Origin: Schmidtea polychroa
Taxonomy: Eukaryota
Reading direction: 5' to 3'
Assembly: GCA_044892525.1 (NCBI GenBank)
Contig: CM097888.1
Span: 19,158,226 to 19,222,000 of the forward strand
DNA: 63,775 nucleotides
Below, piece by piece: positions 7,301-35,875 of the stretch. How positions within the stretch are numbered: the first letter of the stretch is position 1; the number at the start of each line of letters is the position of its first letter. A program made the position numbers and the translations under genes. The notes under the pieces were generated by a model. It saw only the letters and a program-made list of their open reading frames with translations, made no database searches and had not been told where the DNA came from.

Positions 7301-8616
7301 ATTAAAAAATATGAAAAATAACATTTCACTATTGTGTGATTATGTTTGACTTATTGACTTAGAAATCAATTCAAGTATTAAATATTGTTTAAATTTACCT
7401 TCTCCATAAAAGTCTAAAATACAGGATTACAACCGTCCTTCGAGGTGTTTATCCAGTTCAAGGAAGGAGTAAGAAAAAAGTGAGTTACTCTGTTACGTAT
7501 GCGACAAATAGAAAATTATCGTAAAGAAGTTCACTAAAAGTGGTTACAAACAAATAAACTTATTGGTGTTATGAAGTGTTGTTAAAATGTACTAGGATTG
7601 CTGATAGATTTGCCATAAACTCTTCCCAAAAACATCTTCATGACTATTAGTTTTTTTATTATCAGTGTGCCATGGCAACAAACAAGTTGGTAAAAATCAA
7701 TCGGAAAATTAATGAGCAGGTAAGCTTTATTACCATAACTACTCTTCATTGCACTTTCACTTTCGGATTCATGACTGATGATAGAAAATCTTAAATTATT
7801 TCTTATTTTGATAATTTATTCATGGATCTCTTAAATATTCAGTAAAGTCTTAGTTTTCAAAAATTTGGGCGGTGTTGCACTTCAGCATTTAACATTATCT
7901 TAAAAAATTTGAGGGAAATTTGCCATTTAAATCTATTCATCGAAACCTGGTTCAAATTCATCATTATCGGTCTTTCATCAGAAAAATTCAAATATTTTTC
8001 TCTGAAAAAAAAGCCATTCATGATTCTTGAAATGTCAAACGTCCAAGACTTACACTCATGCTCAGTGAATAACCTGGATTTCAAAGGTAGTCGTCGAACG
8101 TCTGTCTACTAGCCACTTCTGTCCCGCCACTTTTTAACCTCAGACATGAATCGACTACTATTTCGACCACCACTTAATTGATTTATTTTGATAACATTTC
8201 CATAAAATTTTAACTTTACTATTTTGTACACATAAAACAGTTAATAAGATGTTCACAGTTACAGAGTGTGCTGGGGTAGAACTGATCTTCAGTTCAAGTA
8301 GCTGAAACGTGATTGAAAGGCGTCGGAACATCGCATGCAAAAATAACATCAAGTAGAGTCAAACTCAAACACGTCCAAACATCAACAGTTAGCTCAAATA
8401 ATTCAAAGAAAACTAAATAAAATAATGAACCTNNNNNNNNNNNNNNNNNNNNNNNNNNNNNNNNNNNNNNNNNNNNNNNNNNNNNNNNNNNNNNNNNNNN
8501 NNNNNNNNNNNNNNNNNNNNNNNNNNNNNNNNNNNNNNNNNNNNNNNNNNNNNNNNNNNNNNNNNNNNNNNNNNNNNNNNNNNNNNNNNNNNNNNNNNNN
8601 NNNNNNNNNNNNNNNN

Positions 8617-9575
8617 TATTAAATTATATAGTTCAGATTAAAAGGAAAGCCGAAATTGAATGGCGGTCAAACAGAGAAGCAATGGCAAAGAAAGATATGA
8701 TAAAAAAAAAGGGTACAATCAGACATGAAATGGGAAAATGCGCAAACCGGAGGAAGTGGAATAAAGTGAAAAGTTATCGAAATTGAAGCTGGAAAACGGG
8801 AGAGGGGTAGATTAAGGGATGGTGAAGAAGACAGTGAGCAAGAAATTGTTAGAAAATGTGTAGAAAAGGTCGTAAAACAGACAAATGTGGAAAAACGTAA
8901 AATATTAATTAATTAATTAATTGGCTAATGGGAAACCCGAGCTAATGGGAAGCCCGAGCCAATGGAGAACCCGAGCGATGAAGAAAACCCGAGCACGGCA
9001 ATTTGGAAGGGTAAACAAACGAGGAATTCAGAGGGCAATTATCCAAACAATCGGATAAACGAGGGTAAACAAAAGACAGGGAATTACGAAGAGGGTCAAC
9101 AAAAATAGTCAATTAGGGAATGATAGCTGAAGAAGTCAAAACCAATTAGGTCAAAAATGGGGCAATTACAACGATTATGGGAGTATATAAGGAAACTCAA
9201 AATTCACATAATCGGCGATAGCCTTAGGTAGGGATACGAAGAAACAGACGATAGGAGTTCGAGGAATAAAAATAAAAAGGAAAAAGGAATTATAAGAGGA
9301 ATTTAGGAGTCAGAAAGGAATATTAAAGGAGTTCGGATCAGAGAGCGGAATCAAACAAAAGGTGAAACCTAATTTTTAATCGTACAAGGCCGAGACCTTC
9401 CAGAGCGGAGTTCGATCTGAAATTGTGTAAGAATTGTGATTAACCAACAGTGTGATTAATTGTTGAGTTGTGAATTGTTATAAAACAAATATACGTTGGG
9501 AGTTTTGTTTATTGATTTTGGAACACGTGGAGTCAGAGTAACCAACGGTTGATTTTAATATCATAAAACCCAACA
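8617..9575 (+). repeat. 5' LTR (first ~21 bp hidden in the gap)
   Basis: Matches 23897-24855 with no difference seen; ends ...AAAACCCAACA; contains GCTAATGGGAAACCCGA-type tandem repeats and TATATAA at ~9184. Confidence 0.95.
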
Positions 9576-9582
9576 TATATTT

Positions 9583-9725: not shown

Positions 9726-11618
9726 GTGAGTGAATACAATTTGAGGAACCGAAAAGTAAAGATGGCCAGAGAGAACGCTGAGATGATAGATTTTGCCAGT
9801 TGTCAAAAATTACCGGTGAATCAGTATGGAGGAGACCCGGTTGATTTTGCCGATTTCATGGGCGATTATTATATGTACGCTTCGGCCTATGGGTGGTCAC
9901 AAGCCATAATGGTACAAAGATTGCCACTCTATTTAAAAGGAGCCGCAAGAGAAGCTTGGCAGCAAGTGGATAAAAAGACAATTGGAGATGATTGGGCCAA
10001 ACTCAAGGATGCGATGGCAATGAAATTGGTGGGAGGCGATATAAAAAGAATAATGCGCCAAAAATTTTATGCCAGAGTACAAAATCCAAATGAATCGGTA
10101 AGTGAATTTGCATACCATTTAACGACTTTAGCAGACAAAGCCTTCGAAGCAAAGCCTGAACAAGTTGAGATGGTAAAACAAGTCAGAGAACTGCTTCAAG
10201 ATCAATTTATAAATGGAGCCCTTCCTGAAATTAAAAAAGCCCTATGCTACGTGGATTTCTCGAATTTTGATGAACTTGTGAAAAAAGCCATGAAAATTGA
10301 ATTGAACTTGAAAAGTACCAGAAAATCCGAAGTATTTGCTGCCAATGCCGATAAAAGAGAAAGGTCGGTAACTCCAGTTCGAGAACAATGAGTATCAAAG
10401 AAACCAACCCAAACAATCAGTTCGCCAAGACCAAGTAATAAAGTCGAAATTAATAAAGCAGTGTTTGGGAGTCAGGTGGCTGCGAGATCTAACAGCATAG
10501 TATGCGATCACTGCAAGAAAGTGGGACACTATCCAAATCAATGCTGGTTTAAATATGGAAGAGACCCCAGCCCCAGAAGAAAGTTTGTAGAAAGTAAGCC
10601 AATTATTAATGACTTGAAATGCTATAGATGTGGGAAAATGGGCCACATAAGCAGGAATTGTTTTTCAGGTACCCCATCACCATCAAGATCCCCGTCGCCC
10701 CAACGAGATAAAGTGAACACTAATGGACAAATTCAATGTCATTCATGCAAAGGTTATGGCCACATGGCTCGATCATGCCCCCGAAACTCAGAAAGATTTA
10801 GCCGACCAATATTGAGGAAATCTATTAGATTTCAAGATGAATCAGCAAATACTAATGTTGCATATGCTCAAAAGGAGGAGTTTAAAGAGAAAATGGAAAA
10901 TGAATTTCGGGAAATGAGACAGAAATTAAACAAGCTTATGTCAAAGTTCGAATCAGATGAGGAAGCAGATTCGTGTATGGTGTACGAAAAAGAGGCCGAT
11001 GCGGGCGGAAATCTTAGTGATAAAGCAAAAAATGATCTATCAAATGAAAAGGCTGTTCTGTTGATAAAGAAAATAGAAAGATGGTATACCGGAATGAAAA
11101 CAGACCTTCCGAGATTGAAAGAGTGGATTACCGAACTAACTCAAATCCAACTCAGCCAAAGAAAATTGAAAATTATTTTAAACATGTGTGTCAAAGTTTA
11201 CAATAAATACCAAGACGATGAAATTGCAAAACTAATAAAGACATTGGGAAAAGCACTGAGATCCACAGAGAGCTTGACCGACATATTCGTAGAAACTACA
11301 GACGGAAGTGGCAGAAACTTTCAATTTACGATTAAACCTAGCGGGCAAATAAAGGATTTGAGGGAGCTCATTATGTCGAAATATAAAGCAAATGAAGTGC
11401 AAATAAATTTCAAAAAACGGTCGATGGGTCAATTGGCGGATGGAGAATATTTGGTCGATTGTGGGCTGATTCCTGGATATAAAAATGAGGTAAAGATATT
11501 CAATGTAATTAATCAATCAAATTCAGACTTTAAAGGATGGAGGAAAAATTACAGGATTTACGGGATAGTCTGTATATTGGAGATGAAGACGAAATTAGTA
11601 ATTGTCTGGAACGGATGA
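9726..11618 (+). CDS. gag: Gag (capsid + 3 CCHC knuckles) plus ubiquitin-like domain 1; in-frame TGA at 10389-10391
   Basis: ORFs 9726-10391 and 10461-11618 are in the same frame. Knuckles: CDHCKKVGHYPNQC, CYRCGKMGHISRNC, CHSCKGYGHMARSC. The TGA aligns with Trp in the sister element. Confidence 0.9.
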
Positions 11619-14600
11619 TAAGTTCGGAGATGGATCAAAAAGCGAAGGAACAATTATTCGAGAGTATTTTACCGTATATTCATAAAACGACGAACTATCA
11701 GGCGAAATTGAAAGAAATAGTACGAAAAATGGGCCGTGAGCACCGAGAGTCAGATGAGATACCCAGATCATTGGTAATAGCCTTAAATATGAATGGGAAA
11801 GTGGAGTACTTACAAGAACACTGGAGCATGAAGGTGTCGAAAGTACGACGGAAAGCGGTGGAAATGTTGGGTAATGATGGAATTGTTATACTAACTTTCA
11901 AGGGAGTTGAGTTAGATGACGATGAATACTTAATCAATTGTGGGTGCAGTCCGAATTATATAAATAATATCGAAGCCAAGAAACAGGTGAGGGAGGTATC
12001 CGAGAGTATAATAACCCATTGGCCGAGAATTACAAAGGATACGAAGGATGATGACATGGAAATTAAAAAGGAATTGGCTGAAGAACCTAACGACTACGAG
12101 TTAGAAGAGCATGACCCAAAAGATGAAGGCATAAATGACGAGCAAGACGAAATTACGAGTGAGGAGGTGGACGAAAATGATTCAGTAAATCAGGAAACTA
12201 ACCATATAACCGACGAGCTACTAGTGAGTGAAAGAGTGAAAAGTGAGTCGAATTTTGTAGAAGCGGAAAGTAAATTGAATGGTCGAAAGCGGTGTAAAAT
12301 CGAATTAATGGGTGGAAACGAAGAGAACGATAGAATAGATTCCAATGTGGTTGAAAAAACGGATCTGAATAATATGTCTCAAACAGAATCAATTTTGAAA
12401 GGGTTAGTAACAGAATTATATGCACTGGAAGAAGGAAATAGTTGTGACGATGAACTCATACATCAGCTTGCAGCGGTATTAAAACGTCGGCTTCCAGTAG
12501 TACTAAAGGATAATACCATAGAGAGGGTATTTTGCGATGAAACAGTAGTCAAGAGATTAATCAGGAACGGTTTGAACAGAGACATGGTACTAACAGTCCT
12601 TGCTTATGTTGTTCTAGAAATTGGCGTATATGGATGCTTGGAATGCGATAAATCGGAAAAATGGATAGTAAAAGCCACCGAAGTGGCGAATACATATGTG
12701 ACGGGTTGGATTATGCGTAATGGAGGATGGGAAAACTTGGTGCAAAAGTCGGAGACTGCGACAACTGGAAGAAATTATGAGCCGAAAAGAGGGAAAATAA
12801 TGTTTCCATGGCTAACCATGTCTATTTTGGTGATTTTAGGAGTTATTAATACCACAACGTCCTTGGAAGCGTACGATTGCTCCCAGACAGAAATGGGAAA
12901 AGTATATTCGCTAGTAGATGTAGCAGAGTGTCCAGACGCATATCCGAGGAACTTAAAATGGGCAAATGAAGTGACATACCACGTATACCAAGAAGCGGGA
13001 TTTAGACGAGTGAAAGTGAGAGAATGCACAGCAAAAAGAACTACGTTTATATTCTACTGTGGCAAATGGAGCCATTCGTCATTAATCAAAATGCACTCAA
13101 TTCCAAGAGTAATAGAGGTGACACGGGAAAACTGTTTGGCAGCGTTCCAAACAGGAGAGCTGAAAATAAATTCAGAAATTAATTTGAAGGCTAAATTAAA
13201 CTATAAAATTCGTGAAACTATAGCAGTTAAGGGGATAATCAAGGCAAATGGCGATTGCGAGGGTGAAGCGTATAAAGTAGGACAAACAGTCATTGATAAA
13301 ACCGTCGTGATAGAAGAATATGAAACCGAACTAAGGTATTTTGATGGATCATTCGATGACGATACGGGAAAATTGCAAACCCATCCATTTTGTAACATGA
13401 GGGAGAAAAGCTGCAACACAGGTGAGTCAATTCTGGTATATGAAGTTGATACCAAAAAATGCAATTTAGCACATTTAAAATCAATGCCTTTTAAAGAGAT
13501 AACGGGAGAGCAGATCCAAGAGAGACCAGAAAGCACAGTGCTAAACTCAGTCATGAATATGACACTTAGAATCACACCGATACGCTTGAAGAAAACGCCA
13601 ACGGTTTTAATGGCAATGTCCCGAAACGATGGGATGAGATTCTTAAGGAAGAGCGTAAATACGAAGTGTGGACAAACTGTTTATGAGACCAATTATAAAG
13701 GAATTTATTTATCCAAGAAAGTTGTCGAAGAAGCTCAAACAAAATTGTACGCAGAGGAAATTAAACTAACGAACTATTTCAATAATAAGATTGACTATTT
13801 ATTTCATTTTAGCCAAGATACAATTGAAAGTGTGTACAGGGAAATCATACTAAATGATTGCAAGTTAAACAAAGAAATCCTGCGAAACAGAATGGCGATG
13901 GCTATCACGAACCAGAATCTAGTTGCTCCAATGTTGATTTCGGAGAATGGAGTATTCGCTCGAATGCTTGGTGAAGCCTTATATAGTTATAAATGCAAGG
14001 CAGTACCTATTAAATTGATGAAATACAATCAATGCACAAATGAACTGCCTGTGAATGTTAATGGGAAGCTACGATTCATGGAGCCGGTGACACGAATTTT
14101 ATTGGAGGAGGACGCGAAACCGAGAGTGTTGCAGTGCAACAGATTATTGGCTCCACTATACCGCCTGACGCCCGAATCATGGATTGCACTACCTGATCAT
14201 AGAGGGGTGAAAGTCCCAGAAAAATTGGAGTTGACAAAATTAGAATATCTAATTAACTTTACATCGCTAGACAGCATGACTCAAAGTGGAATGTATTCAA
14301 GTGATGATATTGAAGCAGCACGCAGAAACTTATTATTCTCCTCGAAAAAGGAAAGGGTAATAACGAAAATAGTAGACACTATTCTCCCGAGTGGAACTGG
14401 AAAAGTGAATTACGACTATTTATTAACAGTGGATCATTACAAAAAGGCGACGTATAATACGATGAAAAAGATTTGGGGAAAATTTATGTTTATCGGGCAA
14501 GCCTGCGCGGGATTAATCGGAATATATGTGATCGGAATCATGATTAAAGTAATAGTTTCGCAGGTGTTATCAACACACAGATTATACACTATTACAGGTC

Positions 14601-16699
14601 TGTCGTGGAAGTTGGTTATTGGATGTATACCATTGTTAGCTAGATTTTTTATAACACATCATCAATATCGAGAGTTGGAAACGTTGAAAGCACAATTAAC
14701 GAAAAAGAGAAAGGTAAGTTATATTGATGTAACCACTACTTCTAATGAGGACAAAAGTGACAACGAGAACATCGGGGAATCGGCACCGTCATACGAGGAG
14801 GAACGGAATCAAGCCGATACATGGAAAAGTTATCAACTAATAAAAGAATCATTTTCTAATGATGGCAACCAGGATACATTCACTAGATTATGCATACCAA
14901 AATCATTTATACAACCACTACCAGCATATCCGGTAGATAAATTGATAGAAATGAAGCCAGTTGAGAACATTGCACTACAGTGTGAGAGAATCGATCCAAC
15001 GAGCGCAGAAATTGAAAGAAGAAATAGGTTAGGCTTACCTGGTAATTACGTACTAATGGCGTTAGCGAAAATTGGTAAACAACCACGAATAGTAATTCAA
15101 ATAAACAAAAACAGAGTTGAAGCCGTGGTGGATTCTGGATCGAGTCATACAATTATATCAGAAGAAATACTGTCGATGGAAGAGAAAAAACGAATCCAAC
15201 CATCCGATAGTGTAATCAGATCGTTATCCAGAAATGTGTTGCCAGTAATCGGAGAAATCGAAGTTGAACTGATAATCGGTGATAGAAGAATTAGACATAA
15301 CGTGCAAATTATGGAGAAAAGTCCTGTATTGTGCTTGATTGGAATGGATGTATTAGAACAATTAGACGGAATCTCACTTGATTTCAAAACTGGAAACCTG
15401 ATAGTGGGGAAAATAGGTGAAGTCATTCGTAATTCAGGAGAGGTGTTTCTAAACCAATCATTAACTATCCCACCTCAAACAGAAGTGGTATATTATGCTA
15501 GCGCGACTAGTGTCGATAATGATGAATTCATATTCGAACCCAGTCAAACGTTAATTGAAAAATACGAGACCCCAATGTGCGATGAAATCGTGAAAGTGGA
15601 AAACCAATTGCTACCAGTGCGAATAGCGAATTATGGTGATAAATCAATACGATTAAAGCCACAGACAAGATTGGGAAAACTGTCTCACATGTCGGTAGAA
15701 ACAGAAAAGAAAATTCCCAGAAACGTAAAAATTTATAAGGAACCCGAAGTTGTGAGCAAGGACCTGACCGAAAAACAAAAACAGGAATTTACAAAATTGT
15801 TGAGGAGATATCGAGATATTTTTGCGAAACATGAATACGACTTGGGGCTAACAAATATAATAGAGCACGAAATCCCGTTGCTGGATGAAACTCCGGTTAA
15901 AATAAAACCGTACAGAATCCCTTACATCCATCAAACCGAGAGTGATCGACAAATCAGGGCGATGAAAGAGTTTGGGATAATCAGAGACAGCTCCTCACCA
16001 TTTTCTTCGTCTATTGTAATAGTCAAGAAAAAGGACGGAGATTTAAGGTTTTGTGTCGATTATAGAAAACTGAATCAAGTAACAAGAAAGGATACTTATC
16101 CAATTCCCGTACCTCAAGAAATGTTTGATCAGATGGGAGAAGCCCAGTATTTTACGGTCATCGATTTGAACAAAGGCTATAATCAATTTAAAGTAAAAAA
16201 AGAAGATAGAAGGAAAACGGCATTTTCCGATGGTAAAGGCTTATATGAGTTCAATGTCTTGCCGTTTGGCTTAACGGGAGCCCCAGCTACATTCCAAAGA
16301 GGTATGAATTTTGTGTTGAGAGGCATCAGACATGCGCTAGTTTATATTGATGATATAATTATTTTTTCGAATAGCTTTGACGAGCATCTTGATGATGTGG
16401 AAACAGTATTTAAGCGACTTAAAAGCGCAAAATTGAAAATAAAACCATCAAAATGTGAATGGGGAAAATCTGAAGTAATATATGTTGGTCATATTATATC
16501 AAGAAGAGGTCTGCAAACTAATCCGGACAATATTAAAAAGGTGGAAGCGTATCCAATTCCAAAGAACGCGGACGAGGTGAGGCCATTTCTGGGATTAGCA
16601 AGCTATTATAGAAAGTTTATAAAGAATTTCTCGCATATCGCTCAGCCATTAAATTCGCTGTTAAAGAAAAATAATAAGTTTACATGGAGCAAAACCTAA
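11537..16699 (+). CDS. Polyprotein: Ubl2, acidic linker, Bcl-2-like domain, signal helix, chuvirus-like glycoprotein, aspartic protease, RT
   Basis: WIMRNGGWENLV (BH2-like); AYDC...SL..V.EC...YCGKWSH; TM segment WGKFMFIGQACAGLIGIYVIG; VVDSGS protease motif (15131); RFCVDYRKLN, LPFGL, VYIDD (16343). Confidence 0.9.
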   Translation: MEEKLQDLRDSLYIGDEDEISNCLERMISSEMDQKAKEQLFESILPYIHKTTNYQAKLKEIVRKMGREHRESDEIPRSLVIALNMNGKVEYLQEHWSMKVSKVRRKAVEMLGNDGIVILTFKGVELDDDEYLINCGCSPNYINNIEAKKQVREVSESIITHWPRITKDTKDDDMEIKKELAEEPNDYELEEHDPKDEGINDEQDEITSEEVDENDSVNQETNHITDELLVSERVKSESNFVEAESKLNGRKRCKIELMGGNEENDRIDSNVVEKTDLNNMSQTESILKGLVTELYALEEGNSCDDELIHQLAAVLKRRLPVVLKDNTIERVFCDETVVKRLIRNGLNRDMVLTVLAYVVLEIGVYGCLECDKSEKWIVKATEVANTYVTGWIMRNGGWENLVQKSETATTGRNYEPKRGKIMFPWLTMSILVILGVINTTTSLEAYDCSQTEMGKVYSLVDVAECPDAYPRNLKWANEVTYHVYQEAGFRRVKVRECTAKRTTFIFYCGKWSHSSLIKMHSIPRVIEVTRENCLAAFQTGELKINSEINLKAKLNYKIRETIAVKGIIKANGDCEGEAYKVGQTVIDKTVVIEEYETELRYFDGSFDDDTGKLQTHPFCNMREKSCNTGESILVYEVDTKKCNLAHLKSMPFKEITGEQIQERPESTVLNSVMNMTLRITPIRLKKTPTVLMAMSRNDGMRFLRKSVNTKCGQTVYETNYKGIYLSKKVVEEAQTKLYAEEIKLTNYFNNKIDYLFHFSQDTIESVYREIILNDCKLNKEILRNRMAMAITNQNLVAPMLISENGVFARMLGEALYSYKCKAVPIKLMKYNQCTNELPVNVNGKLRFMEPVTRILLEEDAKPRVLQCNRLLAPLYRLTPESWIALPDHRGVKVPEKLELTKLEYLINFTSLDSMTQSGMYSSDDIEAARRNLLFSSKKERVITKIVDTILPSGTGKVNYDYLLTVDHYKKATYNTMKKIWGKFMFIGQACAGLIGIYVIGIMIKVIVSQVLSTHRLYTITGLSWKLVIGCIPLLARFFITHHQYRELETLKAQLTKKRKVSYIDVTTTSNEDKSDNENIGESAPSYEEERNQADTWKSYQLIKESFSNDGNQDTFTRLCIPKSFIQPLPAYPVDKLIEMKPVENIALQCERIDPTSAEIERRNRLGLPGNYVLMALAKIGKQPRIVIQINKNRVEAVVDSGSSHTIISEEILSMEEKKRIQPSDSVIRSLSRNVLPVIGEIEVELIIGDRRIRHNVQIMEKSPVLCLIGMDVLEQLDGISLDFKTGNLIVGKIGEVIRNSGEVFLNQSLTIPPQTEVVYYASATSVDNDEFIFEPSQTLIEKYETPMCDEIVKVENQLLPVRIANYGDKSIRLKPQTRLGKLSHMSVETEKKIPRNVKIYKEPEVVSKDLTEKQKQEFTKLLRRYRDIFAKHEYDLGLTNIIEHEIPLLDETPVKIKPYRIPYIHQTESDRQIRAMKEFGIIRDSSSPFSSSIVIVKKKDGDLRFCVDYRKLNQVTRKDTYPIPVPQEMFDQMGEAQYFTVIDLNKGYNQFKVKKEDRRKTAFSDGKGLYEFNVLPFGLTGAPATFQRGMNFVLRGIRHALVYIDDIIIFSNSFDEHLDDVETVFKRLKSAKLKIKPSKCEWGKSEVIYVGHIISRRGLQTNPDNIKKVEAYPIPKNADEVRPFLGLASYYRKFIKNFSHIAQPLNSLLKKNNKFTWSKT

Positions 16700-18148
16700 C
16701 AATCAGCTTTTGACACGTTAAAGCAGAAATTAGTAATGGCACCTATTTTGCGATGCCCAGATTTTACGAAATCTTTCCTATTAATGACCGATGCCAGTAA
16801 CGTGGCATTGGGAGCGGTGTTAGGTCAGCAAGTGGACGGTGAAAAGGATCACGTAATAGCGTATGCAAGCAGATCTTTAAGGCCACATGAAAAAAATTAT
16901 TCAACAATCGAAAAAGAGACATTAGCGCTAGTTTACGGCATTACTACGTTTAGACAATATTTGCTGGGACGAAAATTCGTTGTATATACTGATCACAACC
17001 CCCTTCAGTGGTTAATGAAGCATAGAGATTCAACTAGTAAATTAATCAGATGGTCAATTGCTCTCCAAGAGTATGATTTCGAAATAAAATATAGAGCAGG
17101 AAAAGCGAATGCAAATGCCGATGCAATGTCAAGAATTCCCAATGGGCTTAGTGGAGAGGATACTGGTACAGAAAAGGTGGAAGGCACAATATTTGCAGCA
17201 ATCAAAGCCGTTAATAATGTGACTGAATTACAAAACGAACAGAAAAAGGATAACCGACTTAAACATTTCTTTGAACAAGCAATCACGGTCAGAAAGGAGA
17301 AAGATTTAAAACAGGTAATGAGTGAAAATCATAAATACATAATTCACGAGGGAATATTAAAATGCGTGAAAAACGACGAGATATTGATTATGATCCCGGA
17401 AAAACAGAGAGATTCACTGTTGATGCAATATCATGATGGAGCCCTAGGAGGACACTTGTCCGCTAGAAAAACCTTATCAAGACTGAAAATGAAGTACTAT
17501 TGGCCAATGATGGAAAAAGACGTAAAAGATTGGTGCAAAAATTGTAAGATATGTATAACTCGAAGAAATACAGGCAATAAAATTAAAGTACCTTTAAAAC
17601 CAATGTCTGTTCCAACCGCACCAATGGAGATGACTGCAATGGACATTGTTGGGCCGTTACCTGAAACAATAAAAGGAAATAAATGCATCGTAGTATTTTG
17701 TGATTATTTGACAAGATGGCCGGAAGCTTACGCCATACCAAATCAAAAGGCTGATACAGTAGCAAAAATATTTGTAGAGAACATTATTTTCCGATATGGT
17801 ACCCCAAAAAAGTTATTAACTGATCAAGGTAAAAATTTCCAAAGCGAATTATTTAAATCAATCACCGAGTTATTCGGAATCTGGAAGTTGAATACTTCGC
17901 CCTACCATCCACAAACCGATGGTTTAGTCGAGAGATTTAATGGCACATTGATAAATATGATTTCGTCGTATGTAAATAGCAAACAGAGAGATTGTGACGA
18001 CTACATAAAGCCTTGTTTGTTTGCATATAGAAATGCTGTCAACCCAAGTACGGGAGAGACACCTTTTTATTTAATGTACTTAAGACGAAACAACATGCCG
18101 ATAGATCTAAACTTCCGTTACTCAATATATGGAAGTACCCGAGTATAA
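16700..18148 (+). CDS. pol: RNase H and integrase, continuing pol past a premature TAA at 16697-16699
   Basis: TDASNVALGAVL, EKETLAL, YTDHNPL; HHCC zinc finger; MDIVGPL...TDQG...PYHPQTDGLVERFN. Confidence 0.95.
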   Translation, partial: QSAFDTLKQKLVMAPILRCPDFTKSFLLMTDASNVALGAVLGQQVDGEKDHVIAYASRSLRPHEKNYSTIEKETLALVYGITTFRQYLLGRKFVVYTDHNPLQWLMKHRDSTSKLIRWSIALQEYDFEIKYRAGKANANADAMSRIPNGLSGEDTGTEKVEGTIFAAIKAVNNVTELQNEQKKDNRLKHFFEQAITVRKEKDLKQVMSENHKYIIHEGILKCVKNDEILIMIPEKQRDSLLMQYHDGALGGHLSARKTLSRLKMKYYWPMMEKDVKDWCKNCKICITRRNTGNKIKVPLKPMSVPTAPMEMTAMDIVGPLPETIKGNKCIVVFCDYLTRWPEAYAIPNQKADTVAKIFVENIIFRYGTPKKLLTDQGKNFQSELFKSITELFGIWKLNTSPYHPQTDGLVERFNGTLINMISSYVNSKQRDCDDYIKPCLFAYRNAVNPSTGETPFYLMYLRRNNMPIDLNFRYSIYGSTRV

Positions 18149-18278
18149 TGCGATAATGCAAGAGAGGGTACAGTCGGTTTGGACAAAAGCCGGATTAACA
18201 ATAAAACATAATCAAGAGAAGTAAAAAGAAGCCTACGATAAGAAAACACGACCTCATGGAATAAAAATTGGAGATTTA

Positions 18279-19698
18279 GTGTATCTTAACAGACCAGAAC
18301 CACTCAAAGGTATGTCTCCAAAGTTACAGAGACCATTTAAAGTGCCATATAAAGTGTGTGATACAACCGAAACAAATTTGAAGTTATTACCGTTTAGGAG
18401 TAAAAAGGCAAATCCTATAATAGTTCATGCCAATCGTTGTAAATTGGTCCCGGAAAATGACGAAGAAAGATATCCATTACGATCGAAACGAAATGAAGAG
18501 AAGGCGGATACAAAAATTCAACAAAAATTCACCAAAAATCCAGTTCCAATCAGTTATCTTAACAGAGTGCTATTCACAACAGTCGTGCTAATGATGATGA
18601 CAAGGGTAAAAGGGATGAGAATGGATTTACCATATGCGATAACAAAAATACCCTTATGGGACAAGATCGATATTTATTCCACTTTTACAAATATTGTTTG
18701 GACTTATCAGTGCGAAATAATGGAGCAAATAGAAATTAGCAACGTGTTAGACCCGTTCACACCTTTCATTATTTTGAATTATGACAGAAATACGTATGCG
18801 GCACGAGAATTAAAAGTTAACTTCAAGTATCCATGGATCATAAAGCAGAATGAATCAGATTCGCTTGAAAAGTTTAATAGTCAAATTCGAATTATAATAC
18901 AAACTAACGAATTATGGAATACCGTGGAAATTGAGCCGATAATGAATGGTATAGATGTGTATTGGGTAGCCTTAGAAAGAGTAAAGGTGCAGGTCATATT
19001 TCAAAATTTTGTGGATATTCTAAACATGCGAAAGGCTTACACTCGGTATTACAATCTCAAAATGAACTCAAATTATACAATAACGGCTAATTACTACGAA
19101 AATGCGATGTATGATAATGGCACAATAATGAAAAATAAATGGACATTGTTTCAAACAGAGAATCAAATAATTCCCCTTAAGAATGTATCGAATCGTGTGA
19201 TTCTTGGAGTTCAAAACGGGTCAATAACAATTTATCGAAAATCCCCAGATGACGAAAGAGTGATTATCAGTAATGGAAAAAAAATTATCGTTTTGTTGGA
19301 TGCCGGTAAAAGCTATTTTTCATTAATTAGTTCTAATTTAGAATATGATTACCTGATAAAAATCAAATATCAACAACGGATATTCGAGCCATATCGATGG
19401 CAAACCGTTCTGGTGGAAACGAGAAGGGTACCAGGCCTGAAATCTGATGTAACCACAGCACGTCCAATTACTACAAAACAATACCAAGTTAACAATCGTG
19501 TAATAAATAAGCGGACTCAAATTGAGACTGATCAAGCTCTAATTATATGTGAATATTTGATATACCTCATCATTGACAGCATTTCTCATATTATCTCTGG
19601 TGTTCATAATAATAACAATCATTCTGTGCAAAAATAGACAGCATATTATAACTGATTTACGACTCGAGCCTTTCAGTGTGATCGAAACCACTGTATAA
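18279..19698 (+). CDS. Integrase C-terminus (GPY/F-like) fused to a signal peptide, ectodomain and TM helix (putative second membrane protein)
   Basis: SPKLQRPFKVPYKV, then hydrophobic VLFTTVVLMMMTRVKG. A shifted frame at 19564-19698 reads TSSLTAFLILSLVFIIITIILCKNR...TTV*. Confidence 0.7.
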
Positions 19699-19909
19699 AA
19701 TTACATTATAAAAATTGCATGCGTGTAAATAAATCTTATAAAACTAGTATGATTATAGATTAATAATAACATAAATTAGTATTTTGGTTGATCGGACTTC
19801 GCTATGGTGTGCTTGGCCTTGCGCGATAAAGAGTGTTTAAGAAAACTTTAATTATATTTAACTTCAGGAAGCCCAAGAGGAAGAGTCAATCAAAGAGTGT
19901 CGAAACTCA

Positions 19910-20113
19910 ATGAAAGAAATGAGAAGAAAAATGAAAGCAATGGAGAGGAAAATTGACGACTTGGAACTAGAGGATATGATTTGCAAAAGAAAGCTGGAAA
20001 GGATGGAAATTCTCCTGTTCCAATACGAAGCGGAAGTCGTGTTGCTAAGAATGCAGATACAGGGAAATGAATGCCCGACCGATGAGGAAAGAGAGATGGA
20101 TGAGTTAGAATAA
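19910..20113 (+). CDS. Small charged coiled-coil ORF inside the element
   Basis: 67 aa, heptad-like (MKEMRRKMKAMERKIDDLELE...); purine-rich like the element's coding region; the frame is open upstream to 19868. Confidence 0.4.
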   Translation: MKEMRRKMKAMERKIDDLELEDMICKRKLERMEILLFQYEAEVVLLRMQIQGNECPTDEEREMDELE

Positions 20114-20699
20114 TTTAATGATTAATAAAATTTACAATTTAAAACCTCACTTTTCGTCCTCGAAGTAGTAAAAGAGAAAGGCTAAACGATAATAACATTT
20201 ACATTAATAAAACTAAATGTTAAAAGAGAATAAATGAATAGAACAAAATAGTCAATAAACAAAATTTATTGATAAGTTAGTCCTCTAGCAGGACAAAACT
20301 CTCGATGTGGGAGTCGTCCACTACACCCCGAGGAGGTCTTTTTTCGAACCTCTTGAACCTGTGGGACAAGTCCACACAGGCAAAGGTACGTTTTAGACCC
20401 GAGCGAGGTGGCGCGGGTACAGGAAGCCTAAGTAAATCCTACAATAATTTTAATTATATAGAAACGAAACTAACCACATGAGGGGATCAAATTTTACTAA
20501 TGAGTCCTAAATTAAAGAATAAAATTAAATTAAGCAAAAAAAAAAATTTAATTAATTCCAACATAAAACAAAAGTAAAGTAAAAAACAGCATAAGTGAAA
20601 AGGCTAAAGCTGTGAGGAAAATTTATATTTATAAATAACTGGCAAATAAAAAACCAACATAAAATCTGTCGCTGTACTCATCATCGACCGTCGATATCC

Positions 20700-23110
20700 G
20701 GACATACAATCATAAAAGCTGAGATTGGATATGGGCGGGGATTTCTTTCATCATACCTGTTTCAAAATTTTACATTTCCTATAATCTTTAAAAATCTAAT
20801 AAATTAATACTTCAAGCATTCCACCAACTTAACTGTGTGAAAAAAAAATATTTTTTTTTGTTTCAGAAACATATACTAACACAATTCCTATAATAAAAAA
20901 ATCAAGCACACTTGCGATGAAATTTATCGTTTCAAAATATAACAGATTTTTCATATACATAAATTATCAAAATTTTTTACAAAACTTCCAAACTTTGTAT
21001 TTCAACTAAGATTTTTATTTTTGTAAAAATTTTCTTTTAAAAATATTGTGTATGGGAAAAAAAATATACAAAAATATCACCGTAACGCATTAGATAAAAA
21101 CCTGAATCACAATAAATTAAATCTTTAATAGTATAAATTAAATTAACTTATAATAAAAGTGCGTGTGGCATGGACAAAAATTGACATTAAATTAGAGCCA
21201 TGTCGTTAAATAACGGTTTATAATGTAGGTGGATAGAAATTATTACTGAGAGAATAGAAAGAAAGAATAACCGCACACAAACACGATTCACAAAATATCT
21301 ATAATAAAAAATACTCACAATAGGACATTGAATAAGATCAAAACTCCACACAATCAAAACTATTAAAATGTTATGTGCAAAATTCTGTTAAGTTATAATA
21401 AAGTTTTCACCAAAAAGCGGAAAAGTTATTCGGCAAAATCGAAGGAAATTAAATTGCATTTAAAAAAAATAATCTGAATTAGATAATGAAACAATAAATA
21501 CCTTTTTTTACTTTTATTTCGAAATGCTAATAAATTTTTTTTTAAAAAAAAAAAAAAATCTTTTATAAATATTCAATAAATTAAAAACCTGAAATTACAT
21601 ACAAAGTATTATAGATGAAACGAAAAGATAAATTAATTATATAAAATAAATTAAATTCTTATTCATTGTCATAACAAAGGCGATTTGGTCCAAACGATAT
21701 TGGGTTCACAGCAACGTGGAGGGCAAGCGACTGACGATTTGATTATTATTATTATTTCAATTTACTAAATTGAAAATAATCAACAATATATTAAAAATAT
21801 AAAATTAACCTCTAATATACTTTGACTCTGATCTGAATGTTCTACACTTGCTGAATAACTTTTGTATAAACCTCCATTTTTGGATGTAACTGAAACGAAA
21901 TAAATTATAAATTAAATAAATTCGTAATAATTAAATAATACAATAATTAGCAACACTTCTCAGGCTGTTTTATGTCGGAAACGTTAATAGTTGGCATACT
22001 CCTACTGGAAAACTTATTAAAAACGTAATTTGTTTAATAACTCCTTAATTGAAAACATTTTTAGAAACTTCTTCAGTACTTACATGAATTTTCTTATATT
22101 TATTACATTTAAAATGTAAAATACTTTATTTAAATTATTTTTTAAGAAAAATAATAATAATAATAATAATTAATAAAATAAAAATAATAAAATTAATATA
22201 AAAAAATAAAAATAATAAATAAAATAAGATAATGATATAAGTGATAAAAACGAAAGATCATGAATATGTGAAGGCAAATAAAAATCCATCAAATAAGCAC
22301 ACACGCATGCATCTAACACAACGGCGATTAGCGATATCAGTATATGAGCATGTCTGAGAAGTAGCATCATCAACACACAGCCTTAACAGTAAGGAATTCT
22401 GAAAATAATAAATAAAATAAGATAATGATATAAGCGATAAAAACGAAAAATCAATCAAAAATCAAAATCATAAATAATGTAAAAATAAATAAACAAAAAA
22501 ATAATGAAAATAATATTAATATTAATTATTATAATTATAAGTAGACTGAATACGAGAAAGGTCTTACCGATTCGTAGACACTGTTAAGTAAGCAAGCTGC
22601 TGCTCCCATTGCTGGTTCATAGTTTTTAACACATCCCACAAGAACCCAATAAGCAGATTTAAATCGTTCTCCTTTAGTATTTGAAATAGTTCCTTTAGCA
22701 ATCCAACATATGTGTCAATTAAAGTTTCCTGAAAATCTCCAGCAGATAGAAATGCCATTTTGAAAATATTGTGTAGTTGCTCAAACGGTAATATCTCACT
22801 GGAGAACTCAGGTATCTGACTGTAGAAATACAGCACCGTTTCAATGTCCTGAATTATTACGGATTTTTAGAGAATTTAAGTTAGATACAAGGCCTATTTA
22901 TACCTAAATTAAGATTAATAAATTAACAAACAAATAATTACCATTTCAAGAGGCAATTGATTATAATTGCCAACATGGGAGGCAGAACATTGTTACTCCC
23001 GGAATCGACATTGATAGCAAGAATCGACATTGAGAGCAAATATAATTTAGACATGATTGATCTGGTAAACATTGAGGGATAAAATTATCTTGCCGTCTCC
23101 AAACTGCAAT
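20700..23110 (-). pseudogene. Intron-containing host-like gene of unknown identity, antisense within the LTR element
   Basis: Exon-like blocks with AG and GT borders, e.g. 22565-22846 DIETVLYFYSQIPEF...YLTVSTNR/gtaag and 22265-22400. Further blocks at ~21810-22040 and ~20700-20760. Confidence 0.45.
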
Positions 23111-23224
23111 TTAATATTAAATTTAAAATTGTATTGTTTATTTACAAGGAAATAAATCAAACTTGTTGACATTATTATATTTATAAACACAGCGTGGAAT
23201 TAATATTGAATCTTTCGTTAAACT

Positions 23225-23490
23225 ATGGAAGAATTAGGAAAGTATATTCTTGATAAATCACTAATTTCCAATAAAGTATGCCGTTACGATGATGATTGTA
23301 TCGATCGACTTAATCATGTTTATACAACTACGCTTATAGGAATTTGTTTTTTTTTATGTTCACAAGGTAACTAGTTGGGAAACCTATCACTTGTTGGCTA
23401 CAGACGGAATTTTCTGACTCTCAAGTGGCATATGCGGAACATGTATGTTGAGTCATGAGTACTTACTACGTGAAATTGGATGAAATTTAA
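23225..23490 (+). pseudogene. inx: Innexin N-terminal fragment (frameshift and TGA at a conserved Trp)
   Basis: YDDDCIDRLNHVYTT...(fs)LVGKPITCWLQTEFSDSQVAYAEHVC*VMSTYYV matches the innexin DDDxxDRLN / VGxPIxCW / CWxxxTY signature. Confidence 0.88.
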
Positions 23491-23841
23491 TTTACTATTG
23501 AACGTAAATAAATTAAATATAAATAAAGTAAATAATTAACTTTTGAAAATGAAATGCTATGAAACACTTAAAAACTATTTAAATGAGAAAATTCACGAAT
23601 AAAGTAAAATCAGATTTTAAATAAAATGCTATGAAACACTTGATTGAAAATTTCAAAAAACTATTTAAATGAGAAAATTCACGAATAAATTAAAATCAGA
23701 TTTTTAAACATAAGAAAAAAAAATGTTGAATTTTAATAAAATGAACAAGACTCGAATGGGACTGAATTGTCGGTATGTCAATAGGTCACCTAATTTTCAG
23801 AAAATATAATAATATATTTTAAATTGAATAAGCATCACATA

Positions 23842-23872
23842 TTTCGAGGACGAAATTTTTTTTAAGGGAGAG
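23842..23872 (+). promoter_or_regulatory. Polypurine tract with upstream TTTCGAGGACGAAA motif
   Basis: TTTCGAGGACGAAATTTTTTTTAAGGGAGAG lies 3 nt before the TGTTG of the 3' LTR, as is typical for Gypsy elements. Confidence 0.75.
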
Positions 23873-23875
23873 CTA

Positions 23876-24855
23876 TGTTGAGGTTTGAAAATAAATTATT
23901 AAATTATATAGTTCAGATTAAAAGGAAAGCCGAAATTGAATGGCGGTCAAACAGAGAAGCAATGGCAAAGAAAGATATGATAAAAAAAAAGGGTACAATC
24001 AGACATGAAATGGGAAAATGCGCAAACCGGAGGAAGTGGAATAAAGTGAAAAGTTATCGAAATTGAAGCTGGAAAACGGGAGAGGGGTAGATTAAGGGAT
24101 GGTGAAGAAGACAGTGAGCAAGAAATTGTTAGAAAATGTGTAGAAAAGGTCGTAAAACAGACAAATGTGGAAAAACGTAAAATATTAATTAATTAATTAA
24201 TTGGCTAATGGGAAACCCGAGCTAATGGGAAGCCCGAGCCAATGGAGAACCCGAGCGATGAAGAAAACCCGAGCACGGCAATTTGGAAGGGTAAACAAAC
24301 GAGGAATTCAGAGGGCAATTATCCAAACAATCGGATAAACGAGGGTAAACAAAAGACAGGGAATTACGAAGAGGGTCAACAAAAATAGTCAATTAGGGAA
24401 TGATAGCTGAAGAAGTCAAAACCAATTAGGTCAAAAATGGGGCAATTACAACGATTATGGGAGTATATAAGGAAACTCAAAATTCACATAATCGGCGATA
24501 GCCTTAGGTAGGGATACGAAGAAACAGACGATAGGAGTTCGAGGAATAAAAATAAAAAGGAAAAAGGAATTATAAGAGGAATTTAGGAGTCAGAAAGGAA
24601 TATTAAAGGAGTTCGGATCAGAGAGCGGAATCAAACAAAAGGTGAAACCTAATTTTTAATCGTACAAGGCCGAGACCTTCCAGAGCGGAGTTCGATCTGA
24701 AATTGTGTAAGAATTGTGATTAACCAACAGTGTGATTAATTGTTGAGTTGTGAATTGTTATAAAACAAATATACGTTGGGAGTTTTGTTTATTGATTTTG
24801 GAACACGTGGAGTCAGAGTAACCAACGGTTGATTTTAATATCATAAAACCCAACA
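23876..24855 (+). repeat. 3' LTR (980 bp)
   Basis: Terminal inverted repeat TGTTG...CAACA; matches the 5' LTR. Confidence 0.95.
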
Positions 24856-24887
24856 TTATTATTTGCTACGGGTAGGAGAACATAGAA

Positions 24888-35857: not shown

Positions 35858-35875
35858 TGGTGAGCCCGACGTGAT
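35858..35875 (+). promoter_or_regulatory. Primer-binding site, tRNA-Trp-like
   Basis: TGGTGAGCCCGACGTGAT, 7 nt after the LTR end. Confidence 0.85.

What the first reader, a model, noticed from the sequence alone, without database searches (positions are those of the whole stretch)
12383..12860. Bcl-2-like domain placed so that the glycoprotein signal helix becomes its tail anchor
Seen: WIMRNGGWENLV (12707-12742) closely matches the BH2 motif (Bcl-xL WIQENGGWDTFV). NGLNRDMVLTVLAY (from 12566) aligns with BH1 (DGVNWGRIVAFFSF) but lacks the NWGR core, as many viral Bcl-2 proteins do. Helix spacing over ~120 aa fits the fold. About 20 aa later comes one hydrophobic helix, MFPWLTMSILVILGVINTTTS. 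Inference: after signal-peptidase cleavage this helix could leave the Bcl-2 domain membrane-anchored like cellular Bcl-2 proteins, giving a retrotransposon-encoded apoptosis regulator.
Basis: partly seen in the sequence, partly recalled or inferred. Interest (0 to 1): 0.92.

Follow-up and report, generated by a model that had tools for sequence, protein, structure and literature searches.

The report
Bcl-2-like domain in a retroelement polyprotein
An endogenous retrovirus-like element carries, just upstream of its envelope glycoprotein's signal helix, a small helical domain that is conserved in three distant relatives. Its only detectable resemblance is a weak but repeatable one to the Bcl-2 family of cell-death regulators, which no retroelement is known to encode.

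Summary
WIMRNGGWENLV lies at 12707-12742, the BH1-like stretch starts at 12566, and a hydrophobic helix follows 19 residues later.

The segment is an all-helical domain of about 125 residues inside a GAG-ENV-POL Ty3/gypsy-type LTR element. That gene order is already known. I found the same domain in three distant relatives, at 23-25% identity. GGW is invariant in all four and makes up three of only six invariant columns.

Evidence that it is Bcl-2-like is consistent but modest:
- **PDB sequence searches** return Bcl-2/Bcl-xL on top. E improves from 0.046 (one sequence) to 0.015 (two) to 4.4e-4 (four).
- **The three relatives without the window's sequence** give E 0.01.
- **NCBIfam and Pfam** Bcl-2 models are weak sub-threshold hits.
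- **Foldseek** ranks the Bcl-2 family first for two AlphaFold models, but those models are poor (pLDDT about 48, TM 0.47 or less).

Against it: the match disappears when the BH2 stretch is removed, the NWGR core is absent, and there is no Pfam hit for the window's copy.

The tail-anchor idea is a reasonable topological inference. The layout of domain, 24-54-residue linker, signal helix and glycoprotein is the same in all four carriers, but processing is not shown. Any role in apoptosis is untested.

Verdict: partly supported, and a new variant of a known kind (virus-encoded Bcl-2 homologues) if it holds.

The parts
8617..9576 (+). 5' LTR, visible part only. Its true start lies inside the N run 8433-8616, which I did not fill.
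   Evidence: 960 nt are 100% identical to 23897-24856 at an offset of 15280.
9726..11618 (+). gag, with a Retrotrans_gag domain, three CCHC zinc knuckles and a C-terminal helical plus ubiquitin-like-looking module. Broken: one in-frame stop.
   Evidence: Pfam PF03732 E 6.5e-9 and PF00098 E 1.2e-10. Stop count.
11537..19637 (+). Accessory-env-pol polyprotein gene. It overlaps the end of gag by 82 nt in the -1 frame. Broken: one in-frame stop and one frame change, both in the pol part. The stretch from the accessory domains through env, protease and most of RT is uninterrupted.
   Evidence: The first 80-96 residues of the last reading frame match the pol C-terminal region of relatives.
11765..11980 (+). 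Ubiquitin-like-looking module, shared with relatives that lack the Bcl-2-like domain.
   Evidence: BLASTP to P0003 (E 3e-9) and P0006 (E 2e-4). The equivalent region of L006 hits Pfam ubiquitin at E 0.0047. There is weak similarity to the end of gag.
12045..12382 (+). Acidic linker, probably disordered.
   Evidence: 37 D+E against 13 K+R in 113 residues.
12368..12745 (+). Bcl-2-like helical domain (residues about 278-403 of the ORF). This is the finding.
   Evidence: Bcl-2 hits. (all-helical models). (conserved in L001, L005, L006).
12566..12607 (+). BH1-like stretch: the loop and the start of the central hydrophobic helix. The NWGR core is absent.
   Evidence: It aligns to the BH1 region of Bcl-2 and Bcl-xL. 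The G two residues before the N is kept in 3 of 4 family members. The hydrophobic helix 12581-12646 has Kyte-Doolittle 2.07.
12707..12742 (+). BH2-like motif.
   Evidence: GGW is invariant in 4 of 4. The first W is kept in 2 of 4. All sequence-level Bcl-2 hits depend on this stretch.
12800..12862 (+). Internal signal or anchor helix of the glycoprotein. It is the putative tail anchor of the upstream domain.
   Evidence: Kyte-Doolittle 2.24. Four basic residues lie in the 12 before it. It ends 7 residues before the conserved start of the G ectodomain. The layout is the same in all four carriers. A helix is also present in relatives that lack the domain.
12863..14482 (+). Envelope glycoprotein ectodomain, a class III-type fusogen of the mononegavirus/chuvirus G kind.
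   Evidence: Pfam PF24664 Monjiviricetes_fusion E 1.4e-88. It is 38-42% identical to P0003-P0006.
14483..14575 (+). Glycoprotein transmembrane (stop-transfer) helix.
   Evidence: Kyte-Doolittle 2.37 over 31 residues.
15077..15367 (+). Retroviral aspartyl protease.
   Evidence: PF00077 E 5e-6 and PF13975 E 8.7e-7.
16022..16498 (+). Reverse transcriptase.
   Evidence: PF00078 E 2e-33.
16760..17074 (+). RNase H.
   Evidence: PF17917 E 3.8e-40.
17393..17911 (+). Integrase: zinc-binding domain and catalytic core.
   Evidence: PF17921 E 6.4e-21 and PF00665 E 1.4e-11.
23897..24856 (+). 3' LTR, the part that can be matched to the visible 5' LTR. The real start is further upstream.

Best explanation
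The segment encodes a real, conserved accessory domain of an old clade of GAG-ENV-POL Ty3/gypsy-type envelope-carrying retroelements. It is most likely a very divergent member of the Bcl-2 fold.

**Position (shown).** The domain sits on the cytosolic side of the polyprotein. An acidic linker precedes it. A linker of 24-54 residues and then the internal signal helix of the class III envelope glycoprotein follow it.

**Topology (inferred).**
- The helix inserts with its N-terminus in the cytosol.
- The glycoprotein ectodomain is translocated into the ER lumen.
- The glycoprotein's own transmembrane helix returns the chain to the cytosol, where protease, RT and integrase must be.
- If signal peptidase cuts after the helix, the upstream product keeps the helix as a C-terminal anchor. 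That gives the same topology as tail-anchored cellular Bcl-2 proteins, but on the ER membrane.

**Function (inferred, untested).** In that position the domain would act on the host's Bcl-2-regulated cell-death machinery, or on related ER functions, in cells that express the element. Large DNA viruses use captured Bcl-2 homologues in this way.
For: **Conservation.** Four carriers are only 39-44% identical in the glycoprotein and 23-25% identical in the domain. They keep the domain in the same place. GGW supplies three of the six invariant columns.

**Sequence match to Bcl-2.**
- All natural top hits in the PDB are Bcl-2 or Bcl-xL, aligned from BH1 to BH2 in one stretch with the right spacing. 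One alignment runs on through the membrane tail.
- The score rises with family depth: 16.8 bits (E 0.046), 18.1 bits (E 0.015), 22.9 bits (E 4.4e-4).
- A profile of the three relatives without the window gives E 0.01.
- The L001 copy alone has the Trichuris suis BCL-2 entry 6v4m (named) as its top hit (E 0.27).
- For the L006 copy alone, the best natural hit is a sponge Bcl-x homologue (E 0.66).

**Family models.** NCBIfam TIGR00865 bcl-2 scores E 0.04 for the window and E 0.0063 for L006. Pfam PF00452 scores E 0.021 for L006.

**Structure.** Both AlphaFold models are all-helical, with a hydrophobic central helix after the BH1-like loop. Foldseek's top 50 PDB matches are almost all Bcl-xL, Bcl-2, Mcl-1 or A1, over 125-150 aligned columns, with probability up to 0.99. 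Viral Bcl-2 homologues take ranks 1, 2, 4 and 6 in BFVD.

**Controls.** A neighbouring 168-residue segment gives scattered, unrelated hits with best E 0.24. The accessory slot of P0003 gives none.

**Topology.** Basic residues precede the helix. The conserved start of the ectodomain lies 6-9 residues after it. A second transmembrane helix lies upstream of the protease.

**Not a recent capture.** The base composition of the domain equals that of the rest of the element.
Against: - No test is strong on its own.
- Pfam PF00452 does not hit the window's copy. All family-model hits are far below the curated cut-offs (13.7-16.5 bits against 283, and 15.8 against 31.4).
- A phmmer scan of 1.84 billion representative proteins found no cellular Bcl-2 at E <= 0.001. 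The two listed hits were spurious repeat proteins.
- With the BH2 stretch removed, no Bcl-2 hit remains, for one sequence or for the four-sequence profile. Similarity beyond BH2 is therefore not detectable on its own.
- Designed helical-repeat proteins reach similar whole-sequence E-values with the same profile, although through several weak stretches.
- The NWGR core of BH1 is absent in all four. I recognised no BH3 or BH4 motif.
- Both models have pLDDT about 48 and pTM below 0.4. TM-scores are 0.47 or less and rmsd is 7-14 A.
- Foldseek scores amino acids as well as shape, so it is not independent of the motif.
- One carrier (L006) has an in-frame stop between the domain and the helix.
- Four relatives lack the domain altogether.
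- Signal-peptidase cleavage, release from the upstream part, and any effect on cell death are not shown.
Confidence: 0.5

Rival explanations
1. The domain is a cytosolic leader or matrix-like adaptor of the envelope protein and is unrelated to Bcl-2. It would be a membrane-anchored helical domain that links the glycoprotein to Gag during budding. In topology it would resemble the type II-anchored leader peptide of foamy-virus Env, or a matrix protein. The GGW motif would then be a membrane-proximal interaction motif that only happens to look like BH2.
For: - It is physically part of the env precursor. In L001 it forms the very start of the env-pol reading frame.
- The arrangement of domain, linker, helix and glycoprotein is conserved.
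- Sequence similarity to Bcl-2 vanishes without the motif.
- The structure models are of low confidence.
- An envelope-carrying element does need some link between capsid and envelope (established retrovirology, not tested here).
Against: - A core assembly function should be present in all relatives. Four of eight relatives with the same glycoprotein lack the domain and carry something else, or almost nothing, in that slot.
- The alignment to Bcl-2 covers about 70 residues with the correct BH1-to-BH2 spacing, not just the motif. It improves as family members are added.
- Foldseek alignments span the whole domain.
- This reading does not exclude a Bcl-2 fold put to a different use.
Confidence: 0.22
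2. The domain has a Bcl-2-type fold but does not work as a pro-survival BH3 sink. It could be a Bax/Bak-like or viroporin-like membrane-active protein, or a regulator of ER calcium or autophagy.
For: - The BH1 NWGR core is missing in all four members. From established knowledge of the family, its Gly and Arg contact the BH3 ligand.
- Co-translational insertion through the glycoprotein's signal would put the protein on the ER rather than on mitochondria (inference).
- The central helix is very hydrophobic in the window's copy (Kyte-Doolittle 2.07).
Against: - The best PDB matches are pro-survival members (Bcl-2, Bcl-xL, Mcl-1, A1). No Bax or Bak appears in the listed top hits.
- The central helix is much less hydrophobic in L001.
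- From established knowledge, many viral Bcl-2 homologues lack recognisable BH motifs yet are pro-survival.
Confidence: 0.15
3. The resemblance is pure chance and the segment is a spacer with no specific function. The first reader found one of the many short known motifs that turn up by chance in several thousand codons.
For: - Each E-value against Bcl-2 for a single sequence is close to the noise seen for a control segment (0.046-0.66 against 0.24).
- With thousands of known signature motifs, about one chance match in the element's proteins is plausible (my own estimate, based).
Against: - The domain and the GGW core are conserved in four lineages that are only 39-44% identical in their best-conserved protein.
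- Profile hits to Bcl-2 rise to E 4.4e-4 and recur without the window's sequence.
- The reading frame is intact over the whole domain in all four.
Confidence: 0.08

Closest known systems
Cellular pro-survival Bcl-2 family (Bcl-2, Bcl-xL; nematode and sponge homologues such as PDB 6v4m and 5twa)
   Same: - Size of about 125-140 residues and all-helical prediction.
- A loop and hydrophobic central helix at the BH1 position.
- An invariant GGW at the BH2 position, with a 49-residue spacing against 50 in Bcl-2 (counted from the alignment).
- A hydrophobic C-terminal helix 24-54 residues after BH2.
- These proteins are the top hits in PDB sequence and fold searches.
   Different: - No NWGR, and no recognisable BH3 or BH4.
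- Below every curated family threshold.
- Not a free-standing gene but a module inside a retroelement polyprotein.
- The membrane helix doubles as the signal sequence of a viral glycoprotein, so insertion would be co-translational into the ER rather than post-translational tail-anchor targeting.
Virus-encoded Bcl-2 homologues of large DNA viruses (gammaherpesviruses, poxviruses, iridoviruses)
   Same: Both are Bcl-2-like modules carried by a virus-like genome, often with degenerate BH motifs. Such proteins take ranks 1, 2, 4 and 6 in the BFVD fold search (E 0.5-1.2, not significant).
   Different: - Those are separate genes of DNA viruses.
- I found no report of one in a retrovirus or LTR retroelement. 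The survey of envelope-carrying retrotransposons does not mention Bcl-2 or apoptosis (PMC13524379).
GAG-ENV-POL envelope-carrying Ty3/gypsy elements ('errantiviruses') of Nematoda, Bryozoa and Platyhelminthes (PMC13524379)
   Same: - LTRs and a gag with zinc knuckles.
- A class III-type fusogen placed between gag and protease-RT-RNase H-integrase.
- That paper reports this non-canonical gene order.
   Different: - That paper describes gag, env and pol only.
- The accessory slot upstream of the env signal helix is not described there. Here it holds a ubiquitin-like module, an acidic linker and the Bcl-2-like domain.
- Pfam assigns the glycoprotein to PF24664 (the mononegavirus/chuvirus G kind), whereas the paper speaks of HSV/gB-type class III fusogens. 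I did not test how the two labels relate.
Internal signal sequences that stay on the upstream protein in viral polyproteins (flavivirus capsid anchor; foamy-virus Env leader peptide). Named from established knowledge and not tested here.
   Same: A cytosolic N-terminal product is left anchored by the signal helix of the downstream glycoprotein after cleavage on the lumenal side. That is the topology proposed here.
   Different: Those upstream parts are capsid or leader peptides with assembly roles, not Bcl-2-like domains. Cleavage here is only inferred from small residues after the helix.

Membership tests
Bcl-2 family (Pfam PF00452 / TIGR00865) | Score above the curated family threshold. | tested here: not met
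   Window copy: no PF00452 hit at E <= 10, and TIGR00865 at 13.7 bits against a cut-off of 283. L006 copy: PF00452 at 15.8 bits against 31.4, and TIGR00865 at 16.5 bits.
Bcl-2 family (Pfam PF00452 / TIGR00865) | Significant profile-to-sequence similarity to solved Bcl-2 family members. | tested here: inconclusive
   The four-sequence profile gives E 4.4e-4 (22.9 bits, one stretch from BH1 to BH2). Three relatives without the window give E 0.01. The trend is 0.046, 0.015, 4.4e-4 as depth grows. The hits are lost when BH2 is cut off.
Bcl-2 family (Pfam PF00452 / TIGR00865) | BH2 motif (W-x3-GGW type). | tested here: met
   GGW is invariant in 4 of 4 and the first W is kept in 2 of 4. The motif is expected 7e-5 times by chance in the ORF.
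Bcl-2 family (Pfam PF00452 / TIGR00865) | BH1 motif with the NWGR core. | tested here: not met
   The core is absent in all four. The N of the core is kept in the window's copy only, the G two residues before it in 3 of 4, and an aromatic in the following helix in 4 of 4.
Bcl-2 family (Pfam PF00452 / TIGR00865) | BH3 and BH4 motifs in the N-terminal helices. | tested here: inconclusive
   No search aligned the N-terminal half to Bcl-2. By eye, the first helix ends in a G-aromatic pair in 2 of 4 copies (the G itself is invariant), reminiscent of the end of the first helix of Bcl-2 as printed. This is not a test.
Bcl-2 family (Pfam PF00452 / TIGR00865) | Globular bundle of about eight helices around a central hydrophobic hairpin, with a BH3-binding groove. 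| tested here: inconclusive
   Two AlphaFold models give seven to eight helices in the right order but with pLDDT 48-49 and pTM 0.37-0.39. Foldseek's top matches are the Bcl-2 family, with TM 0.35-0.47 and E 0.04-0.5.
Bcl-2 family (Pfam PF00452 / TIGR00865) | C-terminal membrane anchor about 20 residues after BH2. | tested here: met
   A hydrophobic helix lies 24-54 residues after GGW in all four, although it is the glycoprotein's signal helix. The alignment to full-length Bcl-xL runs through the tail.
Bcl-2 family (Pfam PF00452 / TIGR00865) | Binds BH3 ligands or regulates cell death. | not testable with these tools
   No computation here addresses this.
GAG-ENV-POL envelope-carrying Ty3/gypsy LTR retroelements | Long terminal repeats flanking gag and PR-RT-RNase H-IN in the Ty3/gypsy order. 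| tested here: met
   LTRs of at least 960 nt are 100% identical. Pfam domains fall in that order.
GAG-ENV-POL envelope-carrying Ty3/gypsy LTR retroelements | Class III-type fusion glycoprotein encoded between gag and pol. | tested here: met
   PF24664 at E 1.4e-88 lies between the zinc knuckles and the protease in one reading frame. Relatives P0003-P0006 and L005 show the same order. The order is described in PMC13524379.

The most novel reading that the evidence does not exclude
An old clade of envelope-carrying LTR retroelements, probably of flatworms or similar invertebrates, encodes a genuine Bcl-2 homologue. It is made as part of the env-pol polyprotein and left tail-anchored on the ER by the glycoprotein's own signal helix. 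The element would then hold off the death of the cells in which it replicates. This would be the first Bcl-2 homologue in any reverse-transcribing element, and a new way of making a tail-anchored protein.
Probability: 0.3. Interest if true: 0.85.

Novelty: new variant of a known kind. Interest (0 to 1): 0.62.

Why it matters
Capture of Bcl-2 homologues is a hallmark of large DNA viruses. Retroviruses and LTR retroelements are not known to carry one, and I found no report of one in the literature searched. The recent survey of envelope-carrying retrotransposons does not mention it either.

If the domain is a true Bcl-2 relative, three things follow:
- Even compact reverse-transcribing elements can carry host-manipulation modules.
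- There is an "accessory slot" between gag and env whose content differs among relatives.
- One helix can serve both as a glycoprotein signal and as a tail anchor.

It would also give a handle on how such elements persist in long-lived or stem-like host cells.

If the domain is not Bcl-2-related, it is still a conserved, unannotated, membrane-proximal domain of the env precursor in this clade.

Tried and rejected
**Searches that found nothing useful**
- Pfam on the segment at three lengths gave no Bcl-2 hit.
- phmmer against 1.84 billion representatives gave two hits. Both are artefacts of repeat proteins (Calx-beta and similar).
- A word-indexed search of long proteins with the domain region found nothing. 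The same search starting from P0005 found only P0005 itself.
- An exact-protein look-up of the window's ORF found it is not on record.
- Degenerate-pattern scans with the domain alignment in metagenome, viral and prokaryote-genome collections found nothing.
- The glycoprotein alignment found nothing in the viral and prokaryote-genome collections. It did find L005-L007 in JGI metagenomes.

I did not send that row to any remote prediction or search tool again. I used P0005 as returned (A3, A4). The L001 row was used afterwards only in the closed scripting sandbox.

**Comparisons I could not make**
- I could not fetch cellular Bcl-2 sequences into the session, so no profile-profile (hhalign) comparison with a Bcl-2 family alignment was possible.

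**Readings considered and rejected**
- The hydrophobic stretch 12581-12646 as a real membrane span: this would put the glycoprotein ectodomain on the wrong side of the membrane, and the stretch is not hydrophobic in L001.
- A recent capture of a host gene: the base composition equals that of the rest of the element, and no close cellular relative exists in the databases.

All comparisons rest on tool output.
Full report
**1. What is at the coordinates**

The window is AT-rich: 19-30% G+C outside repeats. Between about 8.6 and 24.9 kb it holds an LTR element.
- Two direct repeats of at least 960 nt are 100% identical (8617-9576 and 23897-24856).
- The start of the 5' copy is hidden in an N run, which I left alone.
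- The interior is 37-40% G+C against 22-26% in the flanks.

Pfam gives the domains in this order:
- Retrotrans_gag and three CCHC knuckles.
- Then, in one long uninterrupted frame starting at 11537: about 420 residues with no family assignment, a PF24664 "Monjiviricetes_fusion" glycoprotein (E 1.4e-88), a retroviral protease, and most of RT.
- RNase H and integrase follow in the same frame.

This is the GAG-ENV-POL order reported for envelope-carrying Ty3/gypsy elements of Nematoda, Bryozoa and Platyhelminthes (PMC13524379).

State of the genes:
- gag has one in-frame stop.
- The pol part has one in-frame stop and one frame change.
- The stretch holding the finding and the glycoprotein is intact.

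**2. The observation**

Every quoted string is present in frame. WIMRNGGWENLV is at 12707-12742. The BH1-like stretch starts at 12566. A 21-residue hydrophobic helix starts at 12800, 19 residues after the motif.

Hydropathy finds three hydrophobic segments in the ORF:
- the central helix of the candidate domain (12581-12646);
- the helix at 12791-12856;
- the glycoprotein's membrane span (14483-14575).

The pattern W-[ILVM]-x3-GGW occurs once in all six frames of the window. It is expected 7e-5 times in this ORF.

**3. Is it a domain, and is it conserved?**

A scan of 1.84 billion representative proteins gave only two hits, and both were spurious repeat proteins. Searching instead with the glycoprotein recovered relatives with the same gene order:
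- P0003, P0004 and P0005, from one ENA assembly;
- P0006, on a contig binned as a Flavobacteriaceae MAG;
- L005, L006 and L007, from JGI metagenomes.

Local profile searches of all six-frame translations show the domain in L001 (=P0005), L005 and L006, and in none of L002, L003, L004 and L007.

The four carriers share 39-44% identity in the first 395 residues of the glycoprotein and 23-25% in the domain. Only six columns are invariant, and three of them are GGW. The first W of the motif is kept in two of four.

In a rough neighbour-joining tree of the glycoprotein, carriers and non-carriers are interleaved. The domain is therefore old in the clade and has been lost or replaced more than once, or moved by recombination. 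The slot upstream of the env signal helix looks like a variable accessory slot.

**4. Is it Bcl-2-like?**

For:
- **The window's segment.** In a PDB sequence search, the 60 listed of 90 hits are all Bcl-2 or Bcl-xL (best E 0.046). They align in one stretch from BH1 to BH2. The spacing between the BH1-position N and GGW is 49 residues against 50 in Bcl-2. One alignment continues through the membrane tail of full-length Bcl-xL.
- **More family members.** Adding them raises the score steadily: two sequences give E 0.015 and four give E 4.4e-4 at 22.9 bits.
- **Relatives only.** A profile of the three relatives without the window's sequence also puts Bcl-2 on top (E 0.01).
- **Single relatives.** L001 has the nematode BCL-2 entry 6v4m as its top hit (E 0.27; named). 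For L006 the best natural hit is a sponge Bcl-x homologue (E 0.66).
- **NCBIfam and Pfam.** NCBIfam's only hit for the window's segment is TIGR00865 bcl-2 (E 0.04). L006 gets TIGR00865 at E 0.0063 and Pfam PF00452 at E 0.021.
- **AlphaFold models.** Both, one with and one without the membrane helix, are all-helical. They have seven to eight helices whose boundaries match the BH1 loop and central helix and the BH2 turn.
- **Foldseek.** The top 50 PDB matches are almost all Bcl-xL, Bcl-2, Mcl-1 or A1, over 125-150 columns. In the viral library, annotated viral Bcl-2 homologues take ranks 1, 2, 4 and 6.
- **Controls.** They behave as noise. A neighbouring segment gives unrelated hits with best E 0.24. 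The accessory slot of P0003 gives none.

Against:
- **Thresholds.** Every hit is below the curated thresholds, and the window's copy has no Pfam hit.
- **BH2 removed.** No Bcl-2 hit survives, for one sequence or for the four-sequence profile.
- **Other high scorers.** Designed helical-repeat proteins reach similar whole-sequence E-values through several weak stretches.
- **Missing motifs.** NWGR is absent in all four. I recognised no BH3 or BH4.
- **Model quality.** The models are poor: pLDDT 48-49, TM 0.47 or less.
- **Foldseek's scoring.** Its score includes amino-acid identity, so it is not independent of the motif.

My reading is that a divergent Bcl-2-fold domain is the most likely explanation, at roughly two in three. 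It is not demonstrated.

**5. The tail-anchor idea**

In all four carriers the order is the same: domain, linker of 24-54 residues, hydrophobic helix, then 6-9 residues to the conserved start of the glycoprotein ectodomain. Relatives without the domain have the helix too. It is therefore first of all the glycoprotein's signal sequence.

Protease, RT and integrase must end up in the cytosol, and a second membrane span lies upstream of them. The first helix must therefore insert with its N-terminus in the cytosol. In the window's copy four basic residues precede it.

From established knowledge of viral polyproteins, cleavage by signal peptidase on the lumenal side leaves such a helix on the upstream product. 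That product would have the topology of a tail-anchored protein on the ER membrane.

- Cleavage is not shown.
- Release from the upstream ubiquitin-like and acidic parts is not shown.
- In L006 one in-frame stop lies between the domain and the helix. There the two could be separate products unless the stop is read through.

**6. Function**

No computation here addresses function.
- **Main proposal:** a cell-death regulator, by analogy with viral Bcl-2 homologues.
- **Main rival:** an env leader or matrix-like adaptor that links glycoprotein and Gag. The domain's absence from half of the relatives weakens this rival.
- **Also open:** a Bcl-2 fold with another role.

**7. Novelty**

The element type and its gene order are known. 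A Bcl-2-like module in a reverse-transcribing element is not reported in the literature I could search. It is not mentioned in the survey of such elements either. I class it as a new variant of a known kind (virus-encoded Bcl-2 homologues), conditional on confirming the fold.

**8. Procedure notes**

- I built no repaired, joined or consensus sequences.
- They were used nowhere.

Noticed in passing
window 11250-11615 and 11765-11980; L006 about 2008-2163: Upstream of the Bcl-2-like domain the polyprotein carries one or two helical plus ubiquitin-like-looking modules, one at the end of gag and one at the start of the next frame. The two are weakly similar to each other (E 2e-5 over 22 residues). 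The module is conserved in P0003 and P0006. In L006 it gives a sub-threshold Pfam ubiquitin hit (E 0.0047). A ubiquitin-like module in a retroelement polyprotein is unusual in itself.
   Followed up: partly
window 12045-12382: A strongly acidic linker, probably disordered (37 D+E in 113 residues), lies between the ubiquitin-like module and the Bcl-2-like domain.
   Followed up: no
window 18500-19637: The last part of the pol gene extends about 370 residues beyond the region that matches the pol C-terminus of relatives. It has no family match and contains a hydrophobic stretch. Relatives also have long pol C-terminal extensions (P0004 has 2855 residues).
   Followed up: partly
window 19638-23896: About 4.2 kb between the end of the coding region and the 3' LTR has host-like composition (27.6% G+C) and no long ORF. 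It holds one short internal repeat near its end. It could be a long untranslated region or foreign DNA inside the element.
   Followed up: no
L001 12777-14612; L002 9624-16787; L003 9547-11622: Relatives carry further accessory coding capacity in or downstream of pol: weak ankyrin-repeat hits in L001 and L002, and an RNase_T exonuclease domain in L003. This clade seems prone to carrying extra modules.
   Followed up: no
window 35104-37412: There is a fragment of a second, related element. An LTR piece is 88% identical to the first element's LTR. A gag ORF (36143-37156) is 75-81% identical at the DNA level. No env or Bcl-2-like part is present in the window.
   Followed up: partly
window 44088-44876 (-): An integrase fragment of another LTR element lies on the minus strand (rve E 3.9e-16).
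   Followed up: no
window 57260-57321 (-), inside repeats 55037-57337: This is the only Rfam match above threshold: the mir-753 precursor (81 bits, E 1.7e-17). It lies in a tandem array with a period of about 1.3 kb. From memory, unverified, this family was first described in a planarian. Together with the GAG-ENV-POL order, this hints that the host is a flatworm.
   Followed up: partly
window 63300-63736: A tandem repeat of about 221 bp with two copies at 81% identity lies at the end of the window.
   Followed up: no
L004 (GCA_003506685.1, DNYW01000170.1): A complete-looking relative of this animal-type retroelement (P0006) sits on a 9-kb contig binned as a Flavobacteriaceae MAG. This is almost certainly eukaryotic DNA mis-binned into a bacterial genome.
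   Followed up: no
window 11537-11618: gag and the next frame overlap by 82 nt in the -1 direction, as expected for a frameshift site. I saw no canonical slippery heptamer in the overlap. In L001 the frame change lies directly in front of the Bcl-2-like domain.
   Followed up: partly
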